Made by a program: the position numbers and the translations under genes. This document shows positions 23,366 through 61,317 of a stretch of DNA of 64,000 nt, piece by piece. Numbering within the stretch: position 1 is the first letter of the stretch; each line of letters begins with the position of its first letter. The stretch spans positions 62,001 to 126,000 of the IMG/VR virus record IMGVR_UViG_3300022868_000009; one strand, 5' to 3'. The notes under the pieces are model-generated. The model did no database searches. It was given only the letters and a program-made list of their open reading frames with translations, and was not told the origin of the DNA.

Positions 23366-23385
23366 CCTAGTTAATATATAAAAAT

Positions 23386-35820: not shown

Positions 35821-35913
35821 AATTTATTATTTTACTTTTAATCGGTCAAAGATAAAATTATATATATTAAATAATGACTCTTCGTTCTTTACTTGACGAC
35901 CATTCAATAATAT

Positions 35914-39979: not shown

Positions 39980-40073
39980 AGTTTGAACCTTATTTTTTGT
40001 TCGGCTACATAAACCTTTTCCTTATATATATTAAAATACATAATTGGTTTTTTAATATTAATATATAATTCAT

Positions 40074-47562: not shown

Positions 47563-48759
47563 TTAAAACTTCTTCCATTTAATTTTATCCAAATAAAGTC
47601 GATCAAATTCATCTTTTGAAAAAAACTTATCTAACTTTAATTTCCCATATATATTTGGATTCTTGGCTTTTATTACTAATTCATTCAAATCTGTTATATC
47701 ATCAAATGTTTTCTTAGCTTTATATTTATCTGATTTCCCTTCAATTATTTTATCTATTAATTTATTCCATAAAAACACACCATATCCTCTATTCAACATT
47801 TTCAAAGCTTTAGAAACACCTTTAGAGTCTCTATCATAAAAGAATTTTAAATCTAACCCCTCATCTGCCTCTGTTAAGAAATTTAACAAATCATTATCAT
47901 TATTAGCTCCTACCAAACCTATAGAATTAGGATAGAATAGACTATCTAGAAAACCTTCAAATATAGTTACAGTATTTTCAAAATTAACATTTAATATGTT
48001 ATAAAAGTGAGATATTTTATTATAAGAAATAGCTTCAGATTCATCTAACATTTTACCTGGATTCATATAGTTATACAACTCTTCAAATTCAACAATTTTA
48101 TAAAATCTCTTATCAGCGTCTTTTTCTAAATTACGCAACTGAATACCTAACAATTTTTCATTATTTCTATTTAACAAAATCATCACAGGACTTTTAAATA
48201 CGACTTTACCATCTCTCATTTTACGGTATAGTCCTTGATAAATATGTTCGTGGTTGTGTATTTGTCTAGTATATTTCAAATATTGATATACGTGTGAATT
48301 AGTTTGTACGGGTTTAATATCTATTAACCAACTATTTTTACGATTATTCATATATTTAACCCATTCTTCAATATCAATAAGTTTATCTAATACTGTATAA
48401 TTATATTCGGTTCGATTATACTTTGTACATTGATCAATATGTTTATAAATTTTAATCTTTTCATCCATATCAATTTCTATATTAAATAATTCACATAACT
48501 TTACAAAAGACATTCTTTCGTCGCAGTTGAAACAAATATATCTTAGACTATCTAGGTATAAATTTCCTCTTTTCTTACTAGCAACTTTTTCGCTATCTCC
48601 ACAGATTGGACAAGCAAAATTAAGTCTACTGGGATTAGAATGATTTGGAAATCTCTTTATTTTTTGTTTTTGTGTTAATTTGTGTTCTTTGTCTAGAATG
48701 TCTTGTATTTTACTTTCAATACTTTCTAAATTAACACCAATATCTTTTTTTTCTGCCAT
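47563..48759 (-). CDS. T4 gp61-like DNA primase
   Basis: NFACPICGDS...KKRG...CFNC zinc finger; TOPRIM IFEGFLDSLF, FFYDRD, DLNE. Confidence 0.85.
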   Translation of the reverse strand: MAEKKDIGVNLESIESKIQDILDKEHKLTQKQKIKRFPNHSNPSRLNFACPICGDSEKVASKKRGNLYLDSLRYICFNCDERMSFVKLCELFNIEIDMDEKIKIYKHIDQCTKYNRTEYNYTVLDKLIDIEEWVKYMNNRKNSWLIDIKPVQTNSHVYQYLKYTRQIHNHEHIYQGLYRKMRDGKVVFKSPVMILLNRNNEKLLGIQLRNLEKDADKRFYKIVEFEELYNYMNPGKMLDESEAISYNKISHFYNILNVNFENTVTIFEGFLDSLFYPNSIGLVGANNDNDLLNFLTEADEGLDLKFFYDRDSKGVSKALKMLNRGYGVFLWNKLIDKIIEGKSDKYKAKKTFDDITDLNELVIKAKNPNIYGKLKLDKFFSKDEFDRLYLDKIKWKKF

Positions 48760-49205: not shown

Positions 49206-49535
49206 ATGAAATTCTTTTACCTAATATTACTATTTTTACTATCCCTCACAATTTCCGCACAAAAAATTTACAAAGTTGATTATAAATATGATGCAGATAT
49301 AAAAGTATATGTTGCTGATTATAAATATGATGCAGATTTGATTGTTTATATCGTAGATTATAAATATGATGCAAATAAAGATGGTTTATGGTATTTCGTA
49401 AATTATAAATATGATGCAGATAAGACAATTTATTTTGTAGATTATAAATACGATGCAAATTTAATAATTTACTTCTGTGATTATAAGTATGATGTAGGTT
49501 GGAAAAATAAATCTAAAATACATTTATTAAGATAA
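49206..49535 (+). CDS. Secreted repeat protein (DUF6150-like)
   Basis: Signal peptide then six VDYKYDAD-type repeats. Confidence 0.65.
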   Translation: MKFFYLILLFLLSLTISAQKIYKVDYKYDADIKVYVADYKYDADLIVYIVDYKYDANKDGLWYFVNYKYDADKTIYFVDYKYDANLIIYFCDYKYDVGWKNKSKIHLLR

Positions 49536-49751: not shown

Positions 49752-50119
49752 TTAATATTCTCAAAGAATTCTTTAACAGGTAATAATATATAACGTGTGC
49801 GCGCGCATGCGTATATAAAAAAATTTTTCAAAAGATTAAAATTTTTAAAAATTTTATTTCATTAATATTATCTTTAACGGTAATACTTATTTTCCTAAGA
49901 ATAAAGAATTTTCAACTTATTGAATTTTTTAGTATAATTAGTATAATCTTTTAATTTTAGAAAAAAGTGACTTTTTAAGTCAAATATATAATTTTCACAC
50001 TTTTATAAATTTTTAAAATTTTTAAACTTTTTAAAATTTTGAAAGTACAAGAAAATAGATTACGAAAAAATAATATTTTTTTAAAGATTTTTCGAAATCA
50101 AAACGTTCTTTAAAATATT

Positions 50120-51050
50120 GTAAAATATAGTCTGTGCTTGGGCAGACGTTCATCTTCGGATGGAGCAGATAAAACATCGTAAGGTGTCGAAAGAGAGGAA
50201 GGTCACTTATTCTCGCCAATAGTCTTCGGATTATGGTCAATCTAAGCAAGTCTCATTTTTGTCTTGACCAACAAGACAGCCTCAATAGAAAGGGGATAAG
50301 ATGAAACAACGTGAGTAACGATCTTTGGTAAGAATAAGATGGCTCAATTGCCCGCAAGGGGAACAAAAGTTATCAAATATAGAATGGGGACATTCCAATA
50401 TCGTTTAATCCACTCATTAAGTGTTCGTTGATAGATAAGAGATAGAATAGTAGTTCGAATGTGGAAAGTTAGAGCATTATTCAGTTTCAAAGGTGTTGAA
50501 AGATGTCTTAACAAACGGCACAGTAAGTCCTCCGGGCTGAAACGCATACGAAGGGTCGTATTTTGTAAGGTGAAACTTATGAATCGGTGGACAGGCACTT
50601 TGTGGTGATATCATTTTTTATTAGCTCACAATGGTAGAGCAGTAGTATTCTAACTAAAGGTAGATGGTTCAATTCCATCATAAAAAAAGCAAAGTCCCTG
50701 TCCGTCTGTTAAGTAAAGGTGCTTAAAACTTTACACTTCGGTGAATAAAGTGGATTCAAAGCTCGCAAGGTAGAGAATCTTTGATACAGTAGCCTCAACT
50801 TTTAACCCTAGCAGGTTATTAACGCCACGATAGTGGTGAGTGTACGCAAAATATCGAGTAACTTAATAGTACTAGTGATGTAACCACATAAAAAGTTACA
50901 GTACAGCTGGTGTACATAGTTGCCTTTCGAGGGATTATGTGGACAATTCAGGAACGAAGAATAGCAACTCTTTGATAATCTGAAGAAAGCAAAACATATA
51001 ATAAACTGTGTGTTTTACCAGTATGACAGTTTTTAGTCTCAAAATTGTTT
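50120..51050 (+). ncRNA. Large ornate ncRNA, GOLLD-like (boundaries approximate)
   Basis: No credible ORF; GC-richer than flanks; UUCG/GCAA hairpins at 50151-50162, 50219-50234, 50351-50360, 50734-50743, 50923-50932; embedded tRNA-like element; terminal stem with AGUCUC loop at 51026-51048; next to tRNA genes. Confidence 0.6.
50615..50687 (+). pseudogene. tRNA-like element inside the large ncRNA (all-AU acceptor stem, 6-nt anticodon loop)
   Basis: TTTTTAT/ATAAAAA acceptor, GCTC/GAGC D-stem, GATGG-TTCAATT-CCATC T-arm. Confidence 0.75.
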
Positions 51051-51450
51051 CTCTATCAAGATAAAAACCTTGACGTGGTGATAGAGCTTTAAACTAATAT
51101 TTATCAAATGTGAAAAAAGTAGTAGAAATTAAAAGACGCAACACGCAGCCCGTTCTCTGCGCTACTTCACAAAAATGTGAACGATAAAAATCTTCACATT
51201 TAAATACACCAAGAATAACACCATCACTGTAGCCCTAAAGGAGTGATGTTGTCGCATAAAAACGATTAGTGTTAGTGTGTGTTTGAGAAGACGACGGGGG
51301 ATTTCACAAAAGTAACATGAATCAAGTAGTGTGAAATAAGAAATTCCTCCAAGTTTTCTCGGAAAATTTTTTTATGCAAGAAATAATTTGTATATTGTCA
51401 AAAATAGAGAATAAATATTTAATATATAAAAAATAGTAAAAACAGAAACA

Positions 51451-51537
51451 ATGAATAATACTTTTAAACATAATAGTTCATCTTTTCATAAGTGGTTTAG
51501 CCGCTTCGGATCGGGAATGTTATGCCTTAAAAGTTAA
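51451..51537 (+). CDS. Putative attenuator leader peptide 1 (MNNTFKHNSSSFHKWFSRFGSGMLCLKS)
   Basis: 28-codon ORF ~30 nt after TAATATATA motif; overlaps antiterminator strand; F/H/W codons match downstream tRNAs. Confidence 0.7.
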   Translation: MNNTFKHNSSSFHKWFSRFGSGMLCLKS

Positions 51538-51566
51538 GATTAAAAAATATTAATCAACAAAGGGAC

Positions 51567-51604
51567 AAACTCGATTCTAACAAGATTCGGGTTTTTTGTT
51601 TTTT
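51567..51604 (+). terminator. Intrinsic terminator upstream of tRNA-His/Trp/Phe (attenuator)
   Basis: AAACTCGATTCT-AACA-AGATTCGGGTTT then T-tract. Confidence 0.8.
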
Positions 51605-51626
51605 ATAAACGTTCTTAAAAATATAT

Positions 51627-51702
51627 GGTGGTTATAGTGTTAGTGGTAGCACGGCAGGTTGTGGTTCTGTTAGGATGGATTCAAATTCCATTAATCACCC
51701 CA
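51627..51702 (+). tRNA. tRNA-His(GTG), encoded G-1 and CCA
   Basis: Cloverleaf; GCAGG-TTGTGGT-TCTGT anticodon arm. Confidence 0.92.
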
Positions 51703-51712
51703 AATTTAACAC

Positions 51713-51783
51713 AGGTCTATAGTGTAACGGTAGCATAAGTGATTCCAAACCACTTGGTCCGGGTTCAAATCCTGGTAGGCCTG
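51713..51783 (+). tRNA. tRNA-Trp(CCA)
   Basis: AGGTCTA/TAGGCCT acceptor; TTCCAAA loop; CCGGG-TTCAAAT-CCTGG. Confidence 0.92.
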
Positions 51784-51852
51784 CGAGAAGTTTAAATATG
51801 GTTAAATGAAGGATGGTTAAAAGGTAGAAAAATGAAATATTAATACAAATTT

Positions 51853-51925
51853 GGAACCGTGGTGTAGGTGGTCTGCACGATACTCTGAAGAAGTATAGGT
51901 ACCCGTTCAACTCGGGTCGGTTCCA
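51853..51925 (+). tRNA. tRNA-Phe(GAA)
   Basis: GGAACCG/CGGTTCC acceptor; ATACT-CTGAAGA-AGTAT. Confidence 0.9.
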
Positions 51926-52002
51926 CTTTAAACTTTTAAATTTTAATATATATTAATGTGAAGAAAGAACCAGTTTTAATGAAAAATAATAAAAATTAAC
52001 AA

Positions 52003-52749
52003 ATGAAAAAATATACACAATTTAGTAAATCTTTAGAAAAAATCAATCAAAATATGGAATTATTTGAAAAAGCTATCGATCAAAATCAAAAAGAAAAAAT
52101 AGATAGATATATTAATGCAAACAATTACAAAAAAGTTCTATCAGAACTAAAACAAATTATTTTTAATTTAAAAAAAGAAATTAAAAATTCCAATTTTGAT
52201 GATTTCATTTATAAACAGAACAATAAAGATATAGAAATAATATATAATCCGACTATTCGTGGTATTTTAACCTATTTAGATGGTAAAAGAGTAGAATTTG
52301 AATATGGAAAAGAAGAGAATCAACAAAAAATCTTAAACACTATCTATATTGATGGTGAAAGAGACCCATTTTTAGATATAACTATTCAACCACCATTTAA
52401 TCAGATACATATTAATAATGGTTTGCCAGTTTTTATGAAAGGTCTAGGATTAGGTAAAAAAGTTTACAAAAAACTAATTAAAGATTTTGGTTATCTTTCT
52501 TCTTTTAAAGGAATAAAACCTTCTATTGAAAGTGATTTGGTTTGGGATACTTTAGCTGATGATAGAGAATTGTTCACTTTTGTGAATGATAACAATATCA
52601 TTTGTTTTTGGAATGAAGTAGATTATGATATTATAATTATTAAATTGAAAGAATTTTACAAAATAAAAGGACAAAAAATCTTTGATAACGATTTTAAAAA
52701 GTTATATAACTTAACTGATGAAAAAATAGAACAAATAATTAATATATAA
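52003..52749 (+). CDS. Hypothetical protein, possible GNAT-like motif
   Basis: MKGLGLGKKVY resembles acetyl-CoA-binding motif A. Confidence 0.5.
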   Translation: MKKYTQFSKSLEKINQNMELFEKAIDQNQKEKIDRYINANNYKKVLSELKQIIFNLKKEIKNSNFDDFIYKQNNKDIEIIYNPTIRGILTYLDGKRVEFEYGKEENQQKILNTIYIDGERDPFLDITIQPPFNQIHINNGLPVFMKGLGLGKKVYKKLIKDFGYLSSFKGIKPSIESDLVWDTLADDRELFTFVNDNNIICFWNEVDYDIIIIKLKEFYKIKGQKIFDNDFKKLYNLTDEKIEQIINI

Positions 52750-52767
52750 AGAAAATCAATTTTAAAC

Positions 52768-53016
52768 ATGAAAATTAAAAGATATAATGAATCATTAATT
52801 GATAATGATAATAACACTAGAGAAGATTTCAATGAAGAAATTGATGATCTAATATCAGAATTAAAGATAAGATATAATAATTTTAATAATTTAATTGATT
52901 CATACAAAATAATAGAAAAAAGTAAAACAGAAGAATGGGAAAAAGTTAGAAATGAACTAAGAGGCGCATTTGATGGTTTTAAAAATGAATTAATACAAAA
53001 AATTAAAAAATTTTAA
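52768..53016 (+). CDS. Hypothetical protein (MKIKRYNES tag)
   Basis: ORF after TAATATATA motif. Confidence 0.55.
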   Translation: MKIKRYNESLIDNDNNTREDFNEEIDDLISELKIRYNNFNNLIDSYKIIEKSKTEEWEKVRNELRGAFDGFKNELIQKIKKF

Positions 53017-53019
53017 ATA

Positions 53020-53094
53020 ATGATTATAATTAACATAAATAGTAAATCGAAAAAGAATAGTCGTCTGAAAACGGCTCGGAATTGTATTACCTAA
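53020..53094 (+). CDS. Putative attenuator leader peptide 2 (MIIININSKSKKNSRLKTARNCIT)
   Basis: 24-codon ORF; AGT AAA TCG AAA AAG AAT AGT cluster matches downstream Lys/Ser tRNAs; contains 1:2 hairpin and antiterminator strand. Confidence 0.7.
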   Translation: MIIININSKSKKNSRLKTARNCIT

Positions 53095-53116
53095 ATTTTT
53101 AGGTACAAAGAATTAC

Positions 53117-53146
53117 AAACCGAGTCTGAAAAGATTCGGTTTTTTT
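53117..53146 (+). terminator. Intrinsic terminator 2 nt before tRNA-Lys (attenuator)
   Basis: AAACCGAGTCT-GAAA-AGATTCGGTTT plus T-tract. Confidence 0.85.
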
Positions 53147-53148
53147 AT

Positions 53149-53226
53149 TGGCCATTAGCTCAGTAGGTTTAGAGCATCTGCCTTTTAAGCAGAGAGTCCA
53201 GGGTTCGATCCCCTGATGGCCAACCA
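53149..53226 (+). tRNA. tRNA-Lys(TTT) with encoded CCA
   Basis: TGGCCAT/ATGGCCA; TCTGC-CTTTTAA-GCAGA; CAGGG-TTCGATC-CCCTG. Confidence 0.95.
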
Positions 53227-53228
53227 AT

Positions 53229-53301
53229 GGATCTGTAGCTCAGTTGGTAGAGCTTCTGCCTTTTAAGCAGAAAGTCCAGGGTTCGAGTCCGACTAGGTCC
53301 A
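53229..53301 (+). tRNA. tRNA-Lys(TTT), second copy with mispaired T-stem
   Basis: GGATCTG/TAGGTCC; same anticodon arm; T-stem CAGGG/CCGAC pairs only 2 bp. Confidence 0.7.
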
Positions 53302-53305
53302 CTAA

Positions 53306-53420
53306 GGCTTATAACAAATAGGTTGTATTTATAGAGCATTTGTCGGGTTACCGCATGTCACTAAAATGTATATTTTAAGAGTTACTAGAGATATATGAGG
53401 TTCGAATCCTTAATAAGCCA
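53306..53420 (+). ncRNA. tRNA-like RNA (acceptor stem and T-arm intact, enlarged non-canonical centre)
   Basis: GGCTTAT/ATAAGCC-A; TGAGG-TTCGAAT-CCTTA; 115 nt. Confidence 0.65.
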
Positions 53421-53424
53421 CTAT

Positions 53425-53508
53425 GGAAAGCGTCCGGTTGGACGAGGGGCTACTCTTGAAAAGTAGTAATGGGTTACACCATTAGGGGTTCGAATCCCTT
53501 GCTTTCCG
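53425..53508 (+). tRNA. tRNA-Ser(TGA)
   Basis: CTACT-CTTGAAA-AGTAG; long variable arm; G discriminator. Confidence 0.93.
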
Positions 53509-53512
53509 CTAT

Positions 53513-53600
53513 GGAAGAGTACCCAAGTTGGTGAAGGGGCTGGTTTGCTAAACCAGTAGGTCTGAAATACGGCGCGTGGGTTCGAGCCCCACTTCTTCCG
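53513..53600 (+). tRNA. tRNA-Ser(GCT)
   Basis: CTGGT-TTGCTAA-ACCAG; long variable arm; G discriminator. Confidence 0.93.
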
Positions 53601-53648
53601 CAATTAGGTTTGAAACTCAGTTGGTGACCTACTAAGAAAGATATTTCA

Positions 53649-53831
53649 TTAAACTTCTTGCCAATGGTTAACACCATTTTTATCAGTTTGTATTTCCCAC
53701 ATATTACCATCATTACCTTTCATTCTAGTTCCTTCATCATGCCATGTTGCACTATCTGTAGGTCCTTTTCTACTTTCTGAATGTCTAACTGAAGCAGCAC
53801 TTGCTTCTTTAAAAGTTTTTAAATGTTTCAT
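53649..53831 (-). CDS. Small tagged protein (MKHLKTFKE) with KGNDGNMW motif
   Basis: 60 aa ORF in tagged-gene array. Confidence 0.6.
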   Translation of the reverse strand: MKHLKTFKEASAASVRHSESRKGPTDSATWHDEGTRMKGNDGNMWEIQTDKNGVNHWQEV

Positions 53832-55021: not shown

Positions 55022-55086
55022 AATTTTTATCTATATATATTAAAGAAATTATTTTATTTTCTTAAAAATTTTTGTATATTATAACA

Positions 55087-55340: not shown

Positions 55341-55625
55341 ATGCAAGATAAATGTAAAATATGTGGTCGTAATGAAACAACATCATTTCATCATTTAATA
55401 CCAGTAACATTACATACTAAAAAGTGGTTCAAAAAAAATTACGAAAAAGACTATATGAAATCACACGGTATAGACTTATGCAAACAATGTCATAAGGCTA
55501 TACATAAATTTTGGGATGAAAAAACTTTGGGCAAAAAATTTAATACATTAAAAAGTTTATTAGAAAATCAAAAAATTAAAAAACACATTGAATGGGTTAT
55601 AAAACTAAAACATAATAAAAAATGA
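55341..55625 (+). CDS. Small HNH-like protein
   Basis: CKICGR...FHHLIP...LCKQCHKAIH. Confidence 0.7.
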   Translation: MQDKCKICGRNETTSFHHLIPVTLHTKKWFKKNYEKDYMKSHGIDLCKQCHKAIHKFWDEKTLGKKFNTLKSLLENQKIKKHIEWVIKLKHNKK

Positions 55626-55903
55626 CAAAAGACAAAACTAAAGACGAATCTAAAAACGAATCTAAAGAAAAAGAAGAAAATTTATACTCAATTATTGTAT
55701 ATAATGACGAAGTTAATACATTTGAACATGTTATTGGTTGTCTTATTAAATACTGTAAACATGAATTAACACAAGCAGAACAATGTACCATGATTATACA
55801 CAATAATGGTAAATGTGATGTTAAAAAAGGCACATTTAAAGAATTAGAAACTCCTTATTATGCTTTACTTGATTCTGGGTTATCTGCTGAAATTGAAAAT
55901 TAA
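55622..55903 (+). CDS. clpS: ClpS N-degron adaptor (Bacteroidota type)
   Basis: IIVYNDEVNTFEHVI..L...C.H...QAEQC..IIH.NGKCDVK.G. Confidence 0.88.
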   Translation: MTKDKTKDESKNESKEKEENLYSIIVYNDEVNTFEHVIGCLIKYCKHELTQAEQCTMIIHNNGKCDVKKGTFKELETPYYALLDSGLSAEIEN

Positions 55904-55985: not shown

Positions 55986-57293
55986 ATGAGAAATATACAA
56001 AAATTATCAGAAAAAGAATTAATAGTACATTTAAAATCTATCTATAATAAACAGATAGATATTTATGATAAATTTGAAAAAACAGGTGAAATTGAACCAA
56101 TTATTACCGATTTTGATGATCAAGATGCATATAAATATTTTATGCAATATGCAATCTTTAAAACTCACCCAAACGCAATAGTAAAATTTAAATTTTTTAA
56201 CCGTGGAAAACATAAATTTCCAGTCGGTTCAGATTATCATATTAAAAAACAAATAGAATCTATGAAAAATCTTAGATTCACTCCTGAAATAGAAAGATCA
56301 TTTAGAAAAAAATTTTCAAATATGAAAGGTGAATCTTATTTTGATGAATCTTTTTATGGTTTTTTAAGAAGTTATAGATACGATCCATCTGAAGTTAAAG
56401 TAACTCAAACAGGAGAAGATATCGAAATAGAAATAACTGGTTCTTGGTTAAAAACAATTTATTGGGAAACACAAATAATGCCGATTTTAACAGAAACTTG
56501 GTATATGTTAACTGATCAATATAAAAATATTCATAATTTTGATCATCTATATGATACACACAGAGACAAATATCGAAGTTTTATAACAGCCGAATCTAAT
56601 ATTGCAGAATTTGGTTTAAGAAGAAGATATTCAAAACTAATACAAGAATTTATCAATATACATTTTATGTGGGAATCACCAGCTAGATATATTGGTACGT
56701 CTAATTGTATGTTCGCTAGAAAATTTAATGTTAAAGCCATTGGAACACAAGCTCATGAATGGATAATGTTTCATGCCGCAAAATATGGACCAGAACTAGC
56801 AAATAAGATATCTTTAGAAAATTGGGTTAAAGTTTACAGAGGAGAATTAGGTATTGCGTTATCTGATACTTATGGTACAGACAATTTCTTAAAATCATTT
56901 GATACTTTACATAGTAAATTATTTGATGGTGTTAGATGGGATTCTGGTGATTTTAAATTATTTACTGATAAAATAATTGGACACTATAAATCATATGGAA
57001 TTAATCCTAAATCCAAAACAATTGTCTATTCTGATGGTATAAATTCATTTTTAAAAATACGAGATATTATAAGATATGCAAGTGATAAAATTAAATGCAC
57101 GTTAGGAATTGGTACTTATTTAACAAATGATATTGGTGTACCAACTATGAATATTGTTATTAAAATGACAGAAGCTAAACCTGAAAAAATGGATTGGAGA
57201 TATTGTATAAAGACATCTGATTCATCTGGTAAATATACTTATACTGACAAAAAAACATTAAACAGATACTTAGAAGATTTGAATATAAATTAA
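55986..57293 (+). CDS. pncB: Nicotinate phosphoribosyltransferase
   Basis: DAYKYFMQ, EFGLRRR, GTSN, GTQAHEW, ALSDTYG, GVRWDSGD, YSDG, GIGTYLTND, NIVIKM. Confidence 0.92.
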   Translation: MRNIQKLSEKELIVHLKSIYNKQIDIYDKFEKTGEIEPIITDFDDQDAYKYFMQYAIFKTHPNAIVKFKFFNRGKHKFPVGSDYHIKKQIESMKNLRFTPEIERSFRKKFSNMKGESYFDESFYGFLRSYRYDPSEVKVTQTGEDIEIEITGSWLKTIYWETQIMPILTETWYMLTDQYKNIHNFDHLYDTHRDKYRSFITAESNIAEFGLRRRYSKLIQEFINIHFMWESPARYIGTSNCMFARKFNVKAIGTQAHEWIMFHAAKYGPELANKISLENWVKVYRGELGIALSDTYGTDNFLKSFDTLHSKLFDGVRWDSGDFKLFTDKIIGHYKSYGINPKSKTIVYSDGINSFLKIRDIIRYASDKIKCTLGIGTYLTNDIGVPTMNIVIKMTEAKPEKMDWRYCIKTSDSSGKYTYTDKKTLNRYLEDLNIN

Positions 57294-59891: not shown

Positions 59892-59931
59892 TAGTTAGTT
59901 AATTATTTTTTGTTGATTATCTCTTTATATA

Positions 59932-61317
59932 TTAAACTTTTTCTTTATCTATTTCAAAATCTTCCCATCCTTCTTCACCATCTTCCCATGACCAATCTTT
60001 TTTACCACCTTTTTTACCAAAAACAGTTTTCTTCTTTTTCTTTTTCTTATCTTCACCACCCTCATCATCAAATTCATCAAATACATCTGGATATAATCTA
60101 CCATCAGCATCAACTTCATATTTCAAATCAAAATAATCTTTAAAGTTTTTAACATCAGACTTTTGAATAGCATATTCTCTATTTAATTCTAATTGTTTTT
60201 CTAAATATAAATTTATATCTTTAACCAAACTATTAAATAATATAAGAGTTTGTTGATTAAAAACACCAATTGGTTTTTTCTTTTTCTTGCTAAATGAACT
60301 AAGAATACACTTAAATACATATTCAATTTTATCATTAGATTTAACAAAATCTTTAGTAAGTTTATTTGGTATAAGTTCCAAATTAATTTTAAATTTATCT
60401 TCTTTAAAAAATGATGGAATACCAAAATTCCATTTTTCAATATCTTTCTTAATATCTTTAATATAATCATTAAATATTTTACACACAATCTCAATATATA
60501 ATTCATCCATTGTTAAAGAATGTAATTTATAATTCTTTAATGCAATTTGTTGAAAATATTCTAAAAATGATAATAATATCAAACTATATGTATCTATATA
60601 TTCTGTGTTATTATTAGATGATAATCTATGATATAAAGGATTTAATAATTCAAATGAATAATCTGTATTATTATCTATTTTAAATATTATTTTCTCTAAA
60701 TTATCATTAAATACTTCATCATTCATCAAAAATGAATTCTTTAACTGAGGATTTAGTATTTGATAAAAGAAATAAGCAAAATTCTTTTCTCCAAAAACAT
60801 ATTCTAAGTCTTTATCACTTGTATTTAAATACAAATCAATTATTTCTAACTGTTTTTCACTTAATTTACCTTTATATAAAACTGGTAAATAATCTACATT
60901 AAATAATTCGCCATATTCTTTTAATTCATCATAATTATAAAAATATTTTGAACCTTTTACAATACAAGTTAATATTAAACCACCTTTAGGTACAATATTA
61001 TACTCTATATTTGCAGGTTGATTATCTGGGAAATATTCAAAACAAAACCACCAATTTTTATTTAATAAATCAGTTACATAATCTGGTAATTGATGAATAT
61101 ATTTATATGCTTGATTATAAAATTTTTGTGTCGCCAAATCAATAAAATTAAGAGGTTGGCTTCTAAGTGATTTAGGTTTTATAATGAATTTATCACCAGT
61201 CCACTTTATAAAAATTTGAGAACCTTGTATATCTTCATATACAATAAGTTCTTTATCTTTTACAAGATCTATAAATTCTTGAGAATTTTCTACGTTAAGT
61301 TTTTTAATCATTGTCAT
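59932..61317 (-). CDS. Conserved-looking phage protein with RNA-ligase-like fold, catalytic Lys apparently absent
   Basis: VYEDIQGS in place of EKxDGS; FCFEY; PVLYKG; EKIIFK. Confidence 0.45.
   Translation of the reverse strand: MTMIKKLNVENSQEFIDLVKDKELIVYEDIQGSQIFIKWTGDKFIIKPKSLRSQPLNFIDLATQKFYNQAYKYIHQLPDYVTDLLNKNWWFCFEYFPDNQPANIEYNIVPKGGLILTCIVKGSKYFYNYDELKEYGELFNVDYLPVLYKGKLSEKQLEIIDLYLNTSDKDLEYVFGEKNFAYFFYQILNPQLKNSFLMNDEVFNDNLEKIIFKIDNNTDYSFELLNPLYHRLSSNNNTEYIDTYSLILLSFLEYFQQIALKNYKLHSLTMDELYIEIVCKIFNDYIKDIKKDIEKWNFGIPSFFKEDKFKINLELIPNKLTKDFVKSNDKIEYVFKCILSSFSKKKKKPIGVFNQQTLILFNSLVKDINLYLEKQLELNREYAIQKSDVKNFKDYFDLKYEVDADGRLYPDVFDEFDDEGGEDKKKKKKKTVFGKKGGKKDWSWEDGEEGWEDFEIDKEKV

What the first reader, a model, noticed from the sequence alone, without database searches (positions are those of the whole stretch)
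53020..53600. Second, independent attenuator: S-K-S-K-K-N-S leader in front of Lys/Lys/Ser(TGA)/Ser(GCT) tRNAs
Seen in sequence: ORF 53020-53094 has AGT AAA TCG AAA AAG AAT AGT. AAA/AAG are read by tRNA-Lys(UUU), AGT by Ser(GCU) and TCG by Ser(UGA), so every tRNA species in the cluster is represented, including both Ser boxes. All classical segments are present. The 1:2 hairpin is AGTCGT/ACGGCT (53059-53076). The 2:3 antiterminator is GGCTCGG-AA-TTGTA with TACAA-A-CCGAGTC. The 3:4 terminator has a GAAA loop (53117-53146) and ends 2 nt before tRNA-Lys. As in leader 1, a small inner hairpin at the stop codon (TACCTAAA/TTTAGGTA) bridges segments 2 and 3. The leader peptide is unrelated to leader 1, yet architecture and codon match recur, which makes coincidence unlikely. 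Caveats: the N-terminal Ile codons have no matching tRNA here, and Lys is abundant genome-wide.
Basis: partly seen in the sequence, partly recalled or inferred. Interest (0 to 1): 0.92.

Follow-up and report, generated by a model that had tools for sequence, protein, structure and literature searches.

The report
Codon-sensing attenuator before phage tRNA genes
A short translated leader rich in Lys and Ser codons, followed by a switchable terminator, sits directly in front of a giant phage's Lys and Ser tRNA genes, and related phages carry the same device re-tuned to whichever tRNAs follow it, which suggests the phage transcribes these tRNAs when ribosomes run short of them.

Summary
A 24-codon ORF (53020-53094) is followed by a strong terminator (53117-53146) that ends 2 nt before tRNA-Lys. 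An upstream segment (53073-53086) can pair with the terminator's 5' arm. Syntenic relatives settled the interpretation. They were found through the neighbouring primase gene (L055, L056, L058). Together with the window they give eight homologous modules. Each has a 19-30 codon ORF and a stop codon just after the antiterminator strand. Each has a terminator 2-30 nt before the first tRNA. The codons ahead of a conserved Ser-Arg anchor change with the tRNAs downstream. FKHKHFKF precedes Phe/Lys/His. Seven Ser codons alternating TCN/AGY precede Ser(UGA)+Ser(GCU). HKWF precedes clusters with Trp. The K/S run precedes Lys/Ser. The true leader-to-cluster assignment ranks 1 of 120 permutations, and the combined enrichment is p~3e-11. 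The best reading is ribosome-mediated attenuation of tRNA genes, arranged in tandem with leader 1. Leader 2 is homologous to leader 1, not independent of it. Leader 2's Ile/Asn codons remain unexplained. Everything here is computational. I found no published precedent.

The parts
52739..52750 (+). Promoter-associated motif TTAATATATAAA. It is the nearest such motif upstream of leader 2, lying 17 nt before orf82.
   Evidence: All 9 exact copies in the window lie 3-43 nt upstream of an ATG-ORF in the same orientation. None lies between a terminator and the tRNAs.
52768..53016 (+). orf82, a protein of unknown function. Its stop codon lies 3 nt before the leader ATG (TAA ATA ATG, in frame), which allows termination-reinitiation coupling.
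   Evidence: no family hit. The orthologous leader in L055 lacks this gene and starts 25 nt after tRNA-Phe.
53020..53094 (+). Leader ORF 2, 24 codons plus stop.
   Evidence: An ORF ending inside the 2:3 loop has p=0.024. The ortholog in L055 keeps the same frame and stop codon.
53041..53061 (+). Sensor codon run S-K-S-K-K-N-S. It ends at the last positions where a stalled ribosome still leaves segment 2 free.
   Evidence: TCG and AAG are rare codons in this phage.
53059..53076 (+). 1:2 hairpin (AGTCGT / ACGGCT). Its AGTCG anchor is conserved across the B, L2 and C modules.
   Evidence: It is weak and does not prevent 2:3 in the model.
53073..53086 (+). Segment 2, the 5' strand of the antiterminator.
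53088..53105 (+). Inner hairpin that contains the leader's stop codon (53092-53094).
   Evidence: It is conserved in L055_L2, L056_B and L058_B.
53114..53126 (+). Segment 3. It pairs either with segment 2 or with the 3' arm of the terminator.
53117..53146 (+). Intrinsic terminator (3:4): an 11-bp stem, a GAAA loop and a T7 run, ending 2 nt before tRNA-Lys.
   Evidence: Five compensatory pairs across the homologs, reached by 0 of 500 shuffles.
53149..53601 (+). The regulated genes: tRNA-Lys(ttt) 53149-53226, tRNA-Lys(ttt) 53229-53302, an odd tRNA-like RNA 53306-53421, tRNA-Ser(tga) 53425-53509 and tRNA-Ser(gct) 53513-53601.
51419..51604 (+). Sister module, leader 1. It comprises the promoter motif 51419-51430, a 28-codon ORF 51451-51537, segment 2 at 51508-51515, segment 3 at 51570-51577 and a terminator at 51569-51604. 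tRNA-His, Trp and Phe follow (51628-51926).

Best explanation
Leader 2 is a ribosome-mediated (leader-peptide) transcription attenuator that gates the Lys-Lys-X-Ser-Ser tRNA cluster.

Proposed mechanism. Transcription starts upstream, probably at the 52739 motif. It passes orf82 and then the 24-codon leader.
- If the ribosome translates smoothly to the stop codon at 53092, it covers segment 2 (53073-53086). Segment 3 then pairs with segment 4, and RNA polymerase terminates at the T-run 2 nt before tRNA-Lys.
- If the ribosome stalls in the S-K-S-K-K-N-S stretch because Lys- or Ser-tRNA is scarce, segment 2 stays free and pairs with segment 3. The terminator cannot form, and the tRNA genes are transcribed.

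Leader 1 works the same way for His/Trp/Phe. Because it also carries Lys and Ser codons, it acts as the outer gate of a tandem pair.

Shown: the anatomy, its excess over chance, its conservation, and the co-variation of leader codons with downstream tRNA identity.
Inferred: translation of the leader, coupling of ribosome and polymerase, and the actual response to tRNA supply.
For: 1. Anatomy at the stated coordinates.

2. The antiterminator complement is stronger than in shuffles in 6 of 8 modules at p<=0.021. The other two give p=0.13 and p=0.40. In all eight it lies at the same place, nt 48-68 from the ATG and just before the stop codon.

3. The terminator helix has 5 compensatory pairs, and 0 of 500 shuffles reach the observed covariation score. 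Segments 2 and 3 differ completely between module types, yet each matches its own terminator.

4. ORFs ending inside the 2:3 loop: p=0.031, 0.024 and 0.011. The ORF and the stop position are kept in the orthologs.

5. In the ribosome-footprint model, 2:3 forms (P about 0.9-1) with the A-site anywhere up to codon 13-16 and is abolished beyond that. In all 8 modules the cognate run ends exactly at that boundary.

6. Codon-to-tRNA match across the family:
- L056_B and L058_B, FKHKHFKF, are followed by Phe/Lys/His tRNAs.
- L056_C has 7 Ser codons alternating between both codon boxes and is followed by Ser(tga)+Ser(gct).
- Trp codons occur only in leaders that precede tRNA-Trp.
- The orthologous leader 2 in L055 has K/S at 7 of 13 positions.
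- The Fisher-combined p is 3e-11, and the true assignment ranks 1 of 120.

7. The terminator lies 2-30 nt before the first tRNA in all 8 modules. No promoter motif lies in between, so the tRNAs can only be made by read-through.

8. The 3' half of the leader uses codons almost never seen in this phage's genes (CGG 0 of 16483), as expected if RNA structure rather than the peptide dictates it.

9. tRNA cleavage by a defence nuclease is known to stall ribosomes at the matching codons (PMC12409363).
Against: - No experimental or transcript data exist, and the host is uncultured.
- For leader 2 the full-length equilibrium favours the terminator whatever the ribosome position. Antitermination would therefore have to be kinetic.
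- Its 1:2 hairpin is too weak to sequester segment 2. An untranslated leader would then be predicted to read through.
- Seven of the first 13 codons are Ile or Asn, and no matching tRNA lies in the cluster.
- Leader 2's own enrichment is modest (p=0.02-0.08).
- The antiterminator is weak in L055_L1 (p=0.40) and L056_B (p=0.13).
- In L058 the A-type terminator before Trp-Ile-Ile has no recognisable leader ORF, and a 156-codon ORF reads across it.
- It is unknown which RNA polymerase transcribes this region, or whether it obeys intrinsic terminators and is coupled to ribosomes.
- Amino-acid starvation would trigger the same switch without benefit to the phage.
Confidence: 0.7

Rival explanations
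1. The switchable terminator is real, but the sensor is not the ribosome. A phage or host protein, a small RNA or a tRNA stabilises either 2:3 or 3:4, and the ORF is incidental.
For: The 2:3/3:4 alternative is well supported on its own. For leader 2 the thermodynamic effect of ribosome position is nil at equilibrium. Leader 2's own codon enrichment is modest.
Against: - The ORF, its length class and its stop position are conserved in all 8 modules, while the peptide sequence is not.
- The codon content tracks the downstream tRNAs.
- No T-box or other riboswitch model matches.
- No conserved unpaired motif that could serve as a binding site was seen.
Confidence: 0.12
2. This is a plain, constitutively leaky terminator that ends the orf82 mRNA, or protects its 3' end after RNase P cuts at tRNA-Lys. 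The small ORF and the upstream complement arise by chance, and the tRNAs are made by a fixed fraction of read-through.
For: The same hairpin sequence serves as an ordinary gene-end terminator in Crocinitomicaceae and other Flavobacteriales genomes. In the window, leader 2 directly follows a protein gene. Each single-locus statistic is only p about 0.005-0.08.
Against: - In L055 the orthologous leader 2 follows a tRNA, not a protein gene, and is still kept as an ORF with the same stop codon.
- Position-specific complementarity recurs in 8 modules whose terminator sequences differ.
- Leader codons co-vary with tRNA content.
Confidence: 0.1
3. The module is a small gene in its own right, encoding a peptide or a terminated small RNA that acts in trans. 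It merely resides in the phage's tRNA island.
For: Terminated attenuator RNAs and leader peptides can act in trans in other systems (rnTrpL/peTrpL; PMC7968998). The N-terminal 17 residues of leader 1 are nearly identical between the window and L055.
Against: - The peptides of different modules share only the SR anchor and differ exactly in the cognate-codon stretch.
- The terminator always abuts the first tRNA.
- This reading does not exclude attenuation. It would be an added function.
Confidence: 0.05

Closest known systems
Leader-peptide transcription attenuators of amino-acid operons (trpL, hisL, thrL, pheL, leuL, ilvL of enterobacteria and counterparts elsewhere)
   Same: Both have a short ORF with a run of cognate codons and a stop codon next to the antiterminator strand. 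Both have mutually exclusive 2:3 and 3:4 hairpins and an intrinsic terminator before the regulated genes. In some modules a 1:2 pairing blocks 2:3 when there is no translation (L055_L1, L056_C).
   Different: - The regulated genes are the tRNAs themselves, not biosynthetic enzymes, so the sensed molecule and the product are the same.
- The sensor runs mix two to five amino acids, matching multi-tRNA clusters.
- The device is phage-encoded.
- The modules are duplicated and re-tuned within one genome and arranged in tandem.
- No Rfam leader family matches. The best match is Thr_leader at 24.5 bits against a cut-off of 55, on L056_A only.
pheST attenuator (pheM leader), and attenuation or T-box control of aminoacyl-tRNA synthetase genes
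   Same: These control a component of the translation apparatus according to the supply of one charged tRNA.
   Different: The pheM leader controls a synthetase, not a tRNA. T-box elements bind uncharged tRNA directly through a specifier codon and a T-box bulge. Neither feature is present here and no Rfam match was found.
Tandem attenuators of Salmonella mgtCBR (PMC3641672)
   Same: Two short ORFs with different codon content sit in series, and each controls a terminator/antiterminator choice.
   Different: Those sense proline and other signals and control a virulence/transport operon. Here each attenuator is followed by its own set of tRNA genes.

Membership tests
Ribosome-mediated leader-peptide transcription attenuator | A short translatable ORF lies in the leader, downstream of a promoter. 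| tested here: met
   The ORF is at 53020-53094. ORFs of this kind are more frequent than in shuffles. A promoter-associated motif lies at 52739 before orf82-leader 2 and at 51419 before leader 1. The ORF is kept in the orthologs.
Ribosome-mediated leader-peptide transcription attenuator | An intrinsic terminator lies between the leader ORF and the regulated genes, with no promoter in between. | tested here: met
   The terminator is at 53117-53146, 2 nt before tRNA-Lys. The gap is 2-30 nt in all 8 modules. No promoter motif lies there.
Ribosome-mediated leader-peptide transcription attenuator | An antiterminator hairpin is mutually exclusive with the terminator. | tested here: met
   Searches give p<=0.021 in 6 of 8 modules, always at the same position. 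In the pair counts, 87.5% of cells pair, against at most 37.5% when the partner is slid. Two compensatory pairs appear in the wider alignment.
Ribosome-mediated leader-peptide transcription attenuator | The ribosome's position selects the fold. A ribosome at or near the stop codon masks segment 2, and a ribosome stalled upstream leaves it free. | tested here: met
   The footprint-masking model was applied to all 8 modules. This is a model only, and for leader 2 the effect is kinetic rather than thermodynamic.
Ribosome-mediated leader-peptide transcription attenuator | The leader holds a run of codons cognate to what is regulated. | tested here: met
   At family level the Fisher p is 3e-11 and the true assignment ranks 1 of 120. 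Leader 2 alone gives p=0.02-0.08. Its Ile and Asn codons are unexplained.
Ribosome-mediated leader-peptide transcription attenuator | A 1:2 pairing sequesters segment 2 when the leader is not translated. | tested here: inconclusive
   The pairing is present in leader 2 (53059-53076) but too weak: P(2:3)=0.96 without a ribosome. It is effective in L055_L1 (0.01) and L056_C (0.11).
Ribosome-mediated leader-peptide transcription attenuator | Read-through responds to the level of the cognate charged tRNA. | not testable with these tools
   This needs reporter assays, in vitro assays or transcript data.
Ribosome-mediated leader-peptide transcription attenuator | The regulated genes encode amino-acid biosynthesis, transport or synthetase functions (true of all described members). 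| tested here: not met
   The downstream genes are tRNAs. This is why I rate it a new variant rather than a new member.
T-box riboswitch | A specifier loop and a conserved T-box antiterminator bulge that pairs with the tRNA 3' end. | tested here: not met
   No T-box match at E<=1 in 49800-53700. The leader is about 130 nt long, and no UGGN bulge is seen in the 2:3 structure.
Curated Rfam leader families (Thr_leader, His_leader, Trp_leader and others) | A score at or above the family's gathering threshold. | tested here: not met
   There is no hit on the window modules. The only hit is Thr_leader at 24.5 bits against a cut-off of 55, on L056_A.

The most novel reading that the evidence does not exclude
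Phages of this clade run a 'tRNA-stat'. Modular, duplicable attenuators read the cell's decoding capacity codon by codon and switch on exactly the tRNA genes that are lacking. Through evolution the sensors are re-tuned whenever tRNA genes are shuffled between clusters. Because tRNA-Lys(UUU) and other tRNAs are cut by bacterial anticodon-nuclease defences, and that cutting stalls ribosomes at the matching codons, the device would work as an inducible counter-defence. It would detect the attack through ribosome stalling and answer with replacement tRNAs.
Probability: 0.3. Interest if true: 0.92.

Novelty: new variant of a known kind. Interest (0 to 1): 0.85.

Why it matters
How phage tRNA genes are regulated is almost unknown. 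The debate on why phages carry them has treated them as constitutively expressed, whether the proposed reason is codon compensation or escape from tRNA-cleaving defences.

A leader-peptide attenuator in front of tRNA genes would be a direct feedback loop in which the sensed molecule and the product are the same. I found no description of such a device in six full-text literature searches.

The family also offers a natural experiment. One RNA scaffold has been re-tuned to different tRNA sets, which makes the specificity rules of attenuators directly testable. It also gives a compact, programmable sensor of the supply of a chosen tRNA.

Tried and rejected
- Homologs of the 248-aa ORF between the two clusters led only to non-syntenic loci without tRNAs. 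It is a multi-copy jumbo-phage family.
- The NAPRTase gene and a tRNA-Lys pattern found only the same phage in IMG/VR.
- A terminator pattern scanned in the viral, metagenome and genome collections mostly returned generic Flavobacteriales terminators or chance hits.
- That pattern did find a module with a 51-codon ORF before a 16-24 tRNA array in another phage (L020/L021/L024/L025, variant L036). Its antiterminator is significant. However, it is not significantly similar to the family outside the hairpin, a promoter-like box lies between the terminator and the first tRNA, and with more than 20 tRNAs downstream any peptide 'matches'. I did not count it as evidence.
- Pairwise local alignment of leaders 1 and 2 outside the terminator is not significant. 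Homology became clear only through the bridging B modules.
- A pattern on the leader 2 anchor hit an unrelated phage protein that encodes SRLKTAQ.
- A pattern on the leader 1 start found only the same phage.
- More distant primase relatives (L060-L063) have no tRNA island.
- INPHARED holds no relative.
- The mini-ORF before the Glu-Tyr-Pro-Phe-Arg cluster elsewhere in the genome (L016) has no terminator, and its 5-of-12 cognate count is, by my own estimate, not more than expected.
- The odd tRNA-like RNA at 53306-53421 could not be assigned an anticodon, so it cannot explain the Ile/Asn codons.
- The Bacteroidetes late-type promoter box seen in L016 is absent from the window.
- No sign of TAG recoding was found, despite the CTA-anticodon tRNA.

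Full report
**Context.** The window is a stretch of about 24% G+C. It comes from a 345-kb uncultured phage, IMG/VR UViG_3300022868_000009, of which 3300023257_000007 is an identical second assembly. Two co-directional tRNA clusters lie on the + strand: His-Trp-Phe at 51628-51926, and Lys-Lys-(odd RNA)-Ser(tga)-Ser(gct) at 53149-53601. Late-type promoters elsewhere in the genome carry the Bacteroidetes -7 box. The terminator hairpin is one that Crocinitomicaceae and other Flavobacteriales use at gene ends. The host is therefore probably a member of the Flavobacteriales.

**The observation.**
- The 24-codon ORF is at 53020-53094.
- The run S-K-S-K-K-N-S is at 53041-53061.
- The small hairpin is at 53059-53076.
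- The inner hairpin, at 53088-53105, holds the stop codon.
- The terminator has an 11-bp stem and a GAAA loop at 53117-53142, plus T7 to 53146. It ends 2 nt before tRNA-Lys.

When the transcript is cut before the 3' arm, the minimum-energy fold pairs 53073-53086 with 53114-53126 and encloses the inner hairpin. Against dinucleotide shuffles, the upstream complement to the terminator's 5' arm has p=0.005-0.01. An ATG-ORF ending inside that loop has p=0.024. The K/S content is modest overall (7/23, p=0.08). The run of 6 in 7 has p=0.002 and is unique among the 227 small ATG-ORFs of the window.

**Transcription layout.** The motif TTAATATATA[AT]A occurs nine times exactly, and each copy lies 3-43 nt upstream of an ATG-ORF in the right orientation. 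Seven precede genes of 161-603 codons, one precedes orf82 (at 52739), and one precedes the 28-codon leader 1 ORF (at 51419). No copy lies between either terminator and its tRNAs. With a 2-nt gap, the Lys/Ser tRNAs can only be made by read-through of the terminator.

**Relatives.** Searches through the neighbouring 248-aa ORF, the NAPRTase gene, tRNA patterns and the terminator pattern gave little. The divergently transcribed primase at 47563-48759 has many homologs. Its three closest long contigs keep the tRNA island.
- L055 (primase 73% identical) has promoter motif, leader 1 ortholog, terminator, Trp-His-Phe, then directly the leader 2 ortholog, terminator, Lys-Ser(tga). Its leader 2 peptide is MRNIKINKSKKSSRLKTARDCIT. 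It is one codon shorter at the N terminus (23 codons against 24) and shares the C-terminal frame and the stop codon. It starts 25 nt after tRNA-Phe, with no protein gene in front.
- L056 (64%) has three modules. Module A has sensor RNIFIHISKINHKWFK and is followed by Trp, two odd tRNAs and Ile. Module B has sensor TYTFKHKHFKFS and is followed by Phe-Lys-Phe-His-Lys-Lys. Module C has sensor KRFYSYSSSSSSR, with seven Ser codons alternating TCN and AGY, and is followed by Ser(tga)-Ser(gct).
- L058 (64%) has module B before Lys-Phe-His-Phe.

**One family.** Alignments A3 and A4 show a common scaffold: the AGTCG anchor that encodes Ser-Arg, segment 2, the inner hairpin and the terminator. Module B shares its 5' part with leader 1 and its 3' part with leader 2. 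Leaders 1 and 2 are thus diverged duplicates, not independent inventions. Pairwise comparison alone could not show this.

**Structure.**
- The terminator helix has five pairs with compensatory changes, and none of 500 shuffles reaches the observed covariation score.
- Segments 2 and 3 are conserved within the B/L2/C subgroup. There, 87.5% of cells pair, against at most 37.5% when the partner is slid.
- Segments 2 and 3 are entirely different in leader 1 and in module A, yet each complements its own terminator arm.
- In all eight modules the best upstream duplex lies 48-68 nt from the ATG, just before the stop codon. The p-values are 0.002-0.021 in six modules, 0.13 in L056_B and 0.40 in L055_L1.
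- The terminator ends 2-30 nt before the first tRNA in all eight.

**Ribosome geometry.** I masked a 27-nt footprint around each codon in turn. In every module 2:3 forms (P about 0.9-1) while the A-site is anywhere up to codon 13-16, and it disappears from there to the stop codon. The cognate run ends exactly at this boundary. Without a ribosome, 2:3 is blocked by a long 1:2 pairing in L055_L1 and L056_C, partly blocked in leader 1 and module A, and not blocked in leader 2 or module B. At full-length equilibrium the terminator wins almost everywhere, so the choice would be kinetic, as in classical attenuators.

**Codons against tRNAs.** I defined the sensor as codons 2 up to that boundary. Enrichment for each module's own cluster is:
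- leader 1 {H,W,F}: p=1e-3
- leader 2 {K,S}: p=0.02
- leader 2 of L055: p=0.003
- module A {W,I}: p=0.03
- module B {F,K,H}: p=3e-4
- module C {S}: p=3e-6

The Fisher combination over the five non-orthologous modules is 3e-11. The true leader-to-cluster assignment ranks first of all 120 permutations. Trp codons occur only in leaders that precede tRNA-Trp.

Leader 1 and module A also carry the codons of the clusters further downstream (11/15 and 12/16). This fits a hierarchy in which the outer attenuator must open before the inner one is even transcribed. L055 has that arrangement, since no promoter can fit between tRNA-Phe and leader 2.

The 3' halves of the leaders use codons that the phage's genes almost never use (CGG 0 of 16483). 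That is expected if RNA structure rather than the peptide is under selection there.

**Weak points.**
- There are no experimental data.
- Leader 2's Ile and Asn codons have no partner tRNA in its cluster.
- Its 1:2 hairpin is ineffective in the model.
- Two modules have weak antiterminators.
- In L058 the A-type terminator before Trp-Ile-Ile has lost any recognisable leader, and a long ORF runs across it.
- Which polymerase transcribes the region is unknown.

**A separate module, left aside.** A 51-codon module lies before a 16-24 tRNA array in another phage (L025, L036). It shows the same architecture. I left it out because homology is unproven, a promoter-like box follows its terminator, and its codon match is uninformative.

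**Comparison with known systems.** The device works like the trp/his/thr/pheA leader-peptide attenuators and meets their structural criteria. It does not match any curated Rfam leader family or the T-box family. It differs in what it controls, which is tRNA genes.

Six full-text searches found no description of leader-peptide attenuation of tRNA genes, in phages or bacteria. Recent work shows that phage tRNAs rescue infection from tRNA-cleaving defences. The targets of the PARIS nuclease AriB include tRNA-Lys(UUU), and toeprinting was used to test whether its cleavage stalls ribosomes at the expected codons (PMC12409363; PMC10264068, PMC11555353). That makes an inducible, stalling-triggered supply of replacement tRNAs a plausible but untested purpose.

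**Verdict.** The finding is real, and its interpretation is supported by comparative evidence. I rate it a new variant of a known mechanism, of high interest, with confidence about 0.7 pending experiment.

Noticed in passing
window 50548-51016 (G+C-rich non-coding block about 50100-51330): A GOLLD-like large RNA: Rfam RF02032, 93.9 bits, E=2e-24, below the 150-bit gathering score. A tRNA with anticodon CTA (amber-suppressor type, called 'Pyl' by ARAGORN) is embedded at 50614-50688. ORF statistics in the window give no sign that TAG is recoded.
   Followed up: partly
window 53306-53421; also L056 5654-5780 (- strand): A tRNA-like RNA of about 116 nt lies between tRNA-Lys and tRNA-Ser. It has a 7-bp acceptor stem and a canonical T arm, but no recognisable D or anticodon arm. 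ARAGORN and Rfam do not call it. A similarly over-long tRNA (127 nt, Rfam tRNA 30.5 bits) ends the Lys cluster in L056.
   Followed up: partly
window, 9 sites: + strand starting at 23371, 33554, 51419, 52739, 62479; - strand spanning 35859-35870, 40023-40034, 55032-55043, 59924-59935: The motif TTAATATATA[AT]A lies 3-43 nt upstream of an ATG-ORF in the same orientation at every exact occurrence. It is probably the promoter, or part of it, for this region's gene class. It differs from the Bacteroidetes-type box TCCGTATATTTGTAT used in another part of the genome (L016).
   Followed up: partly
L016 1170-1760 (same phage, contig 3300023257_000007, about 229.0-229.6 kb): A second G+C-rich block of about 600 nt, apparently structured and non-coding, with a T-arm-like GGTTCGAATCC. 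It sits between a promoter box and a terminator. No Rfam family matches at E<=0.01.
   Followed up: partly
L016 3168-3209: A 13-codon mini-ORF (MKNYEIEDDRVMF) ends 14 nt before a Glu-Tyr-Pro-Phe-Arg tRNA cluster. Five of its 12 codons are cognate, which by my own estimate is not more than expected. There is no terminator and only a weak AT hairpin, so it is not an attenuator of the type described here.
   Followed up: partly
L025 372-596 and L036 7395-7617 (- strand): In another phage (138.7-kb contig), a 51-codon ORF with an antiterminator/terminator pair precedes a 16-24 tRNA array. It has its own Bacteroidetes-type promoter. A second promoter-like box (TTCGTATCTTCA) lies between the terminator and the first tRNA. 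It may be an analogous attenuator, but homology is unproven.
   Followed up: partly
L058 8757-9227 (- strand): A 156-codon ORF containing three consecutive Trp codons reads across an A-type terminator and into tRNA-Trp. The usual short leader is missing there. This could be a rearrangement, an assembly problem or a different mode of control.
   Followed up: no
window 53014-53022: The leader 2 ATG is in frame with orf82 and separated from it only by TAA ATA. In L056 the module B ATG overlaps the stop codon of the upstream 61-codon ORF (ATGA). Both arrangements suggest translational coupling of leaders to upstream ORFs.
   Followed up: partly
window 49206-49535, 55622-55903, 55986-57293: A secreted-looking ORF made of DYKYDA-type repeats, a ClpS homolog (Pfam E=6e-18), and a NAPRTase-like gene whose L055 ortholog carries the Pfam NAPRTase domains. 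The ClpS-NAPRTase pair is syntenic next to the tRNA island in L055.
   Followed up: no
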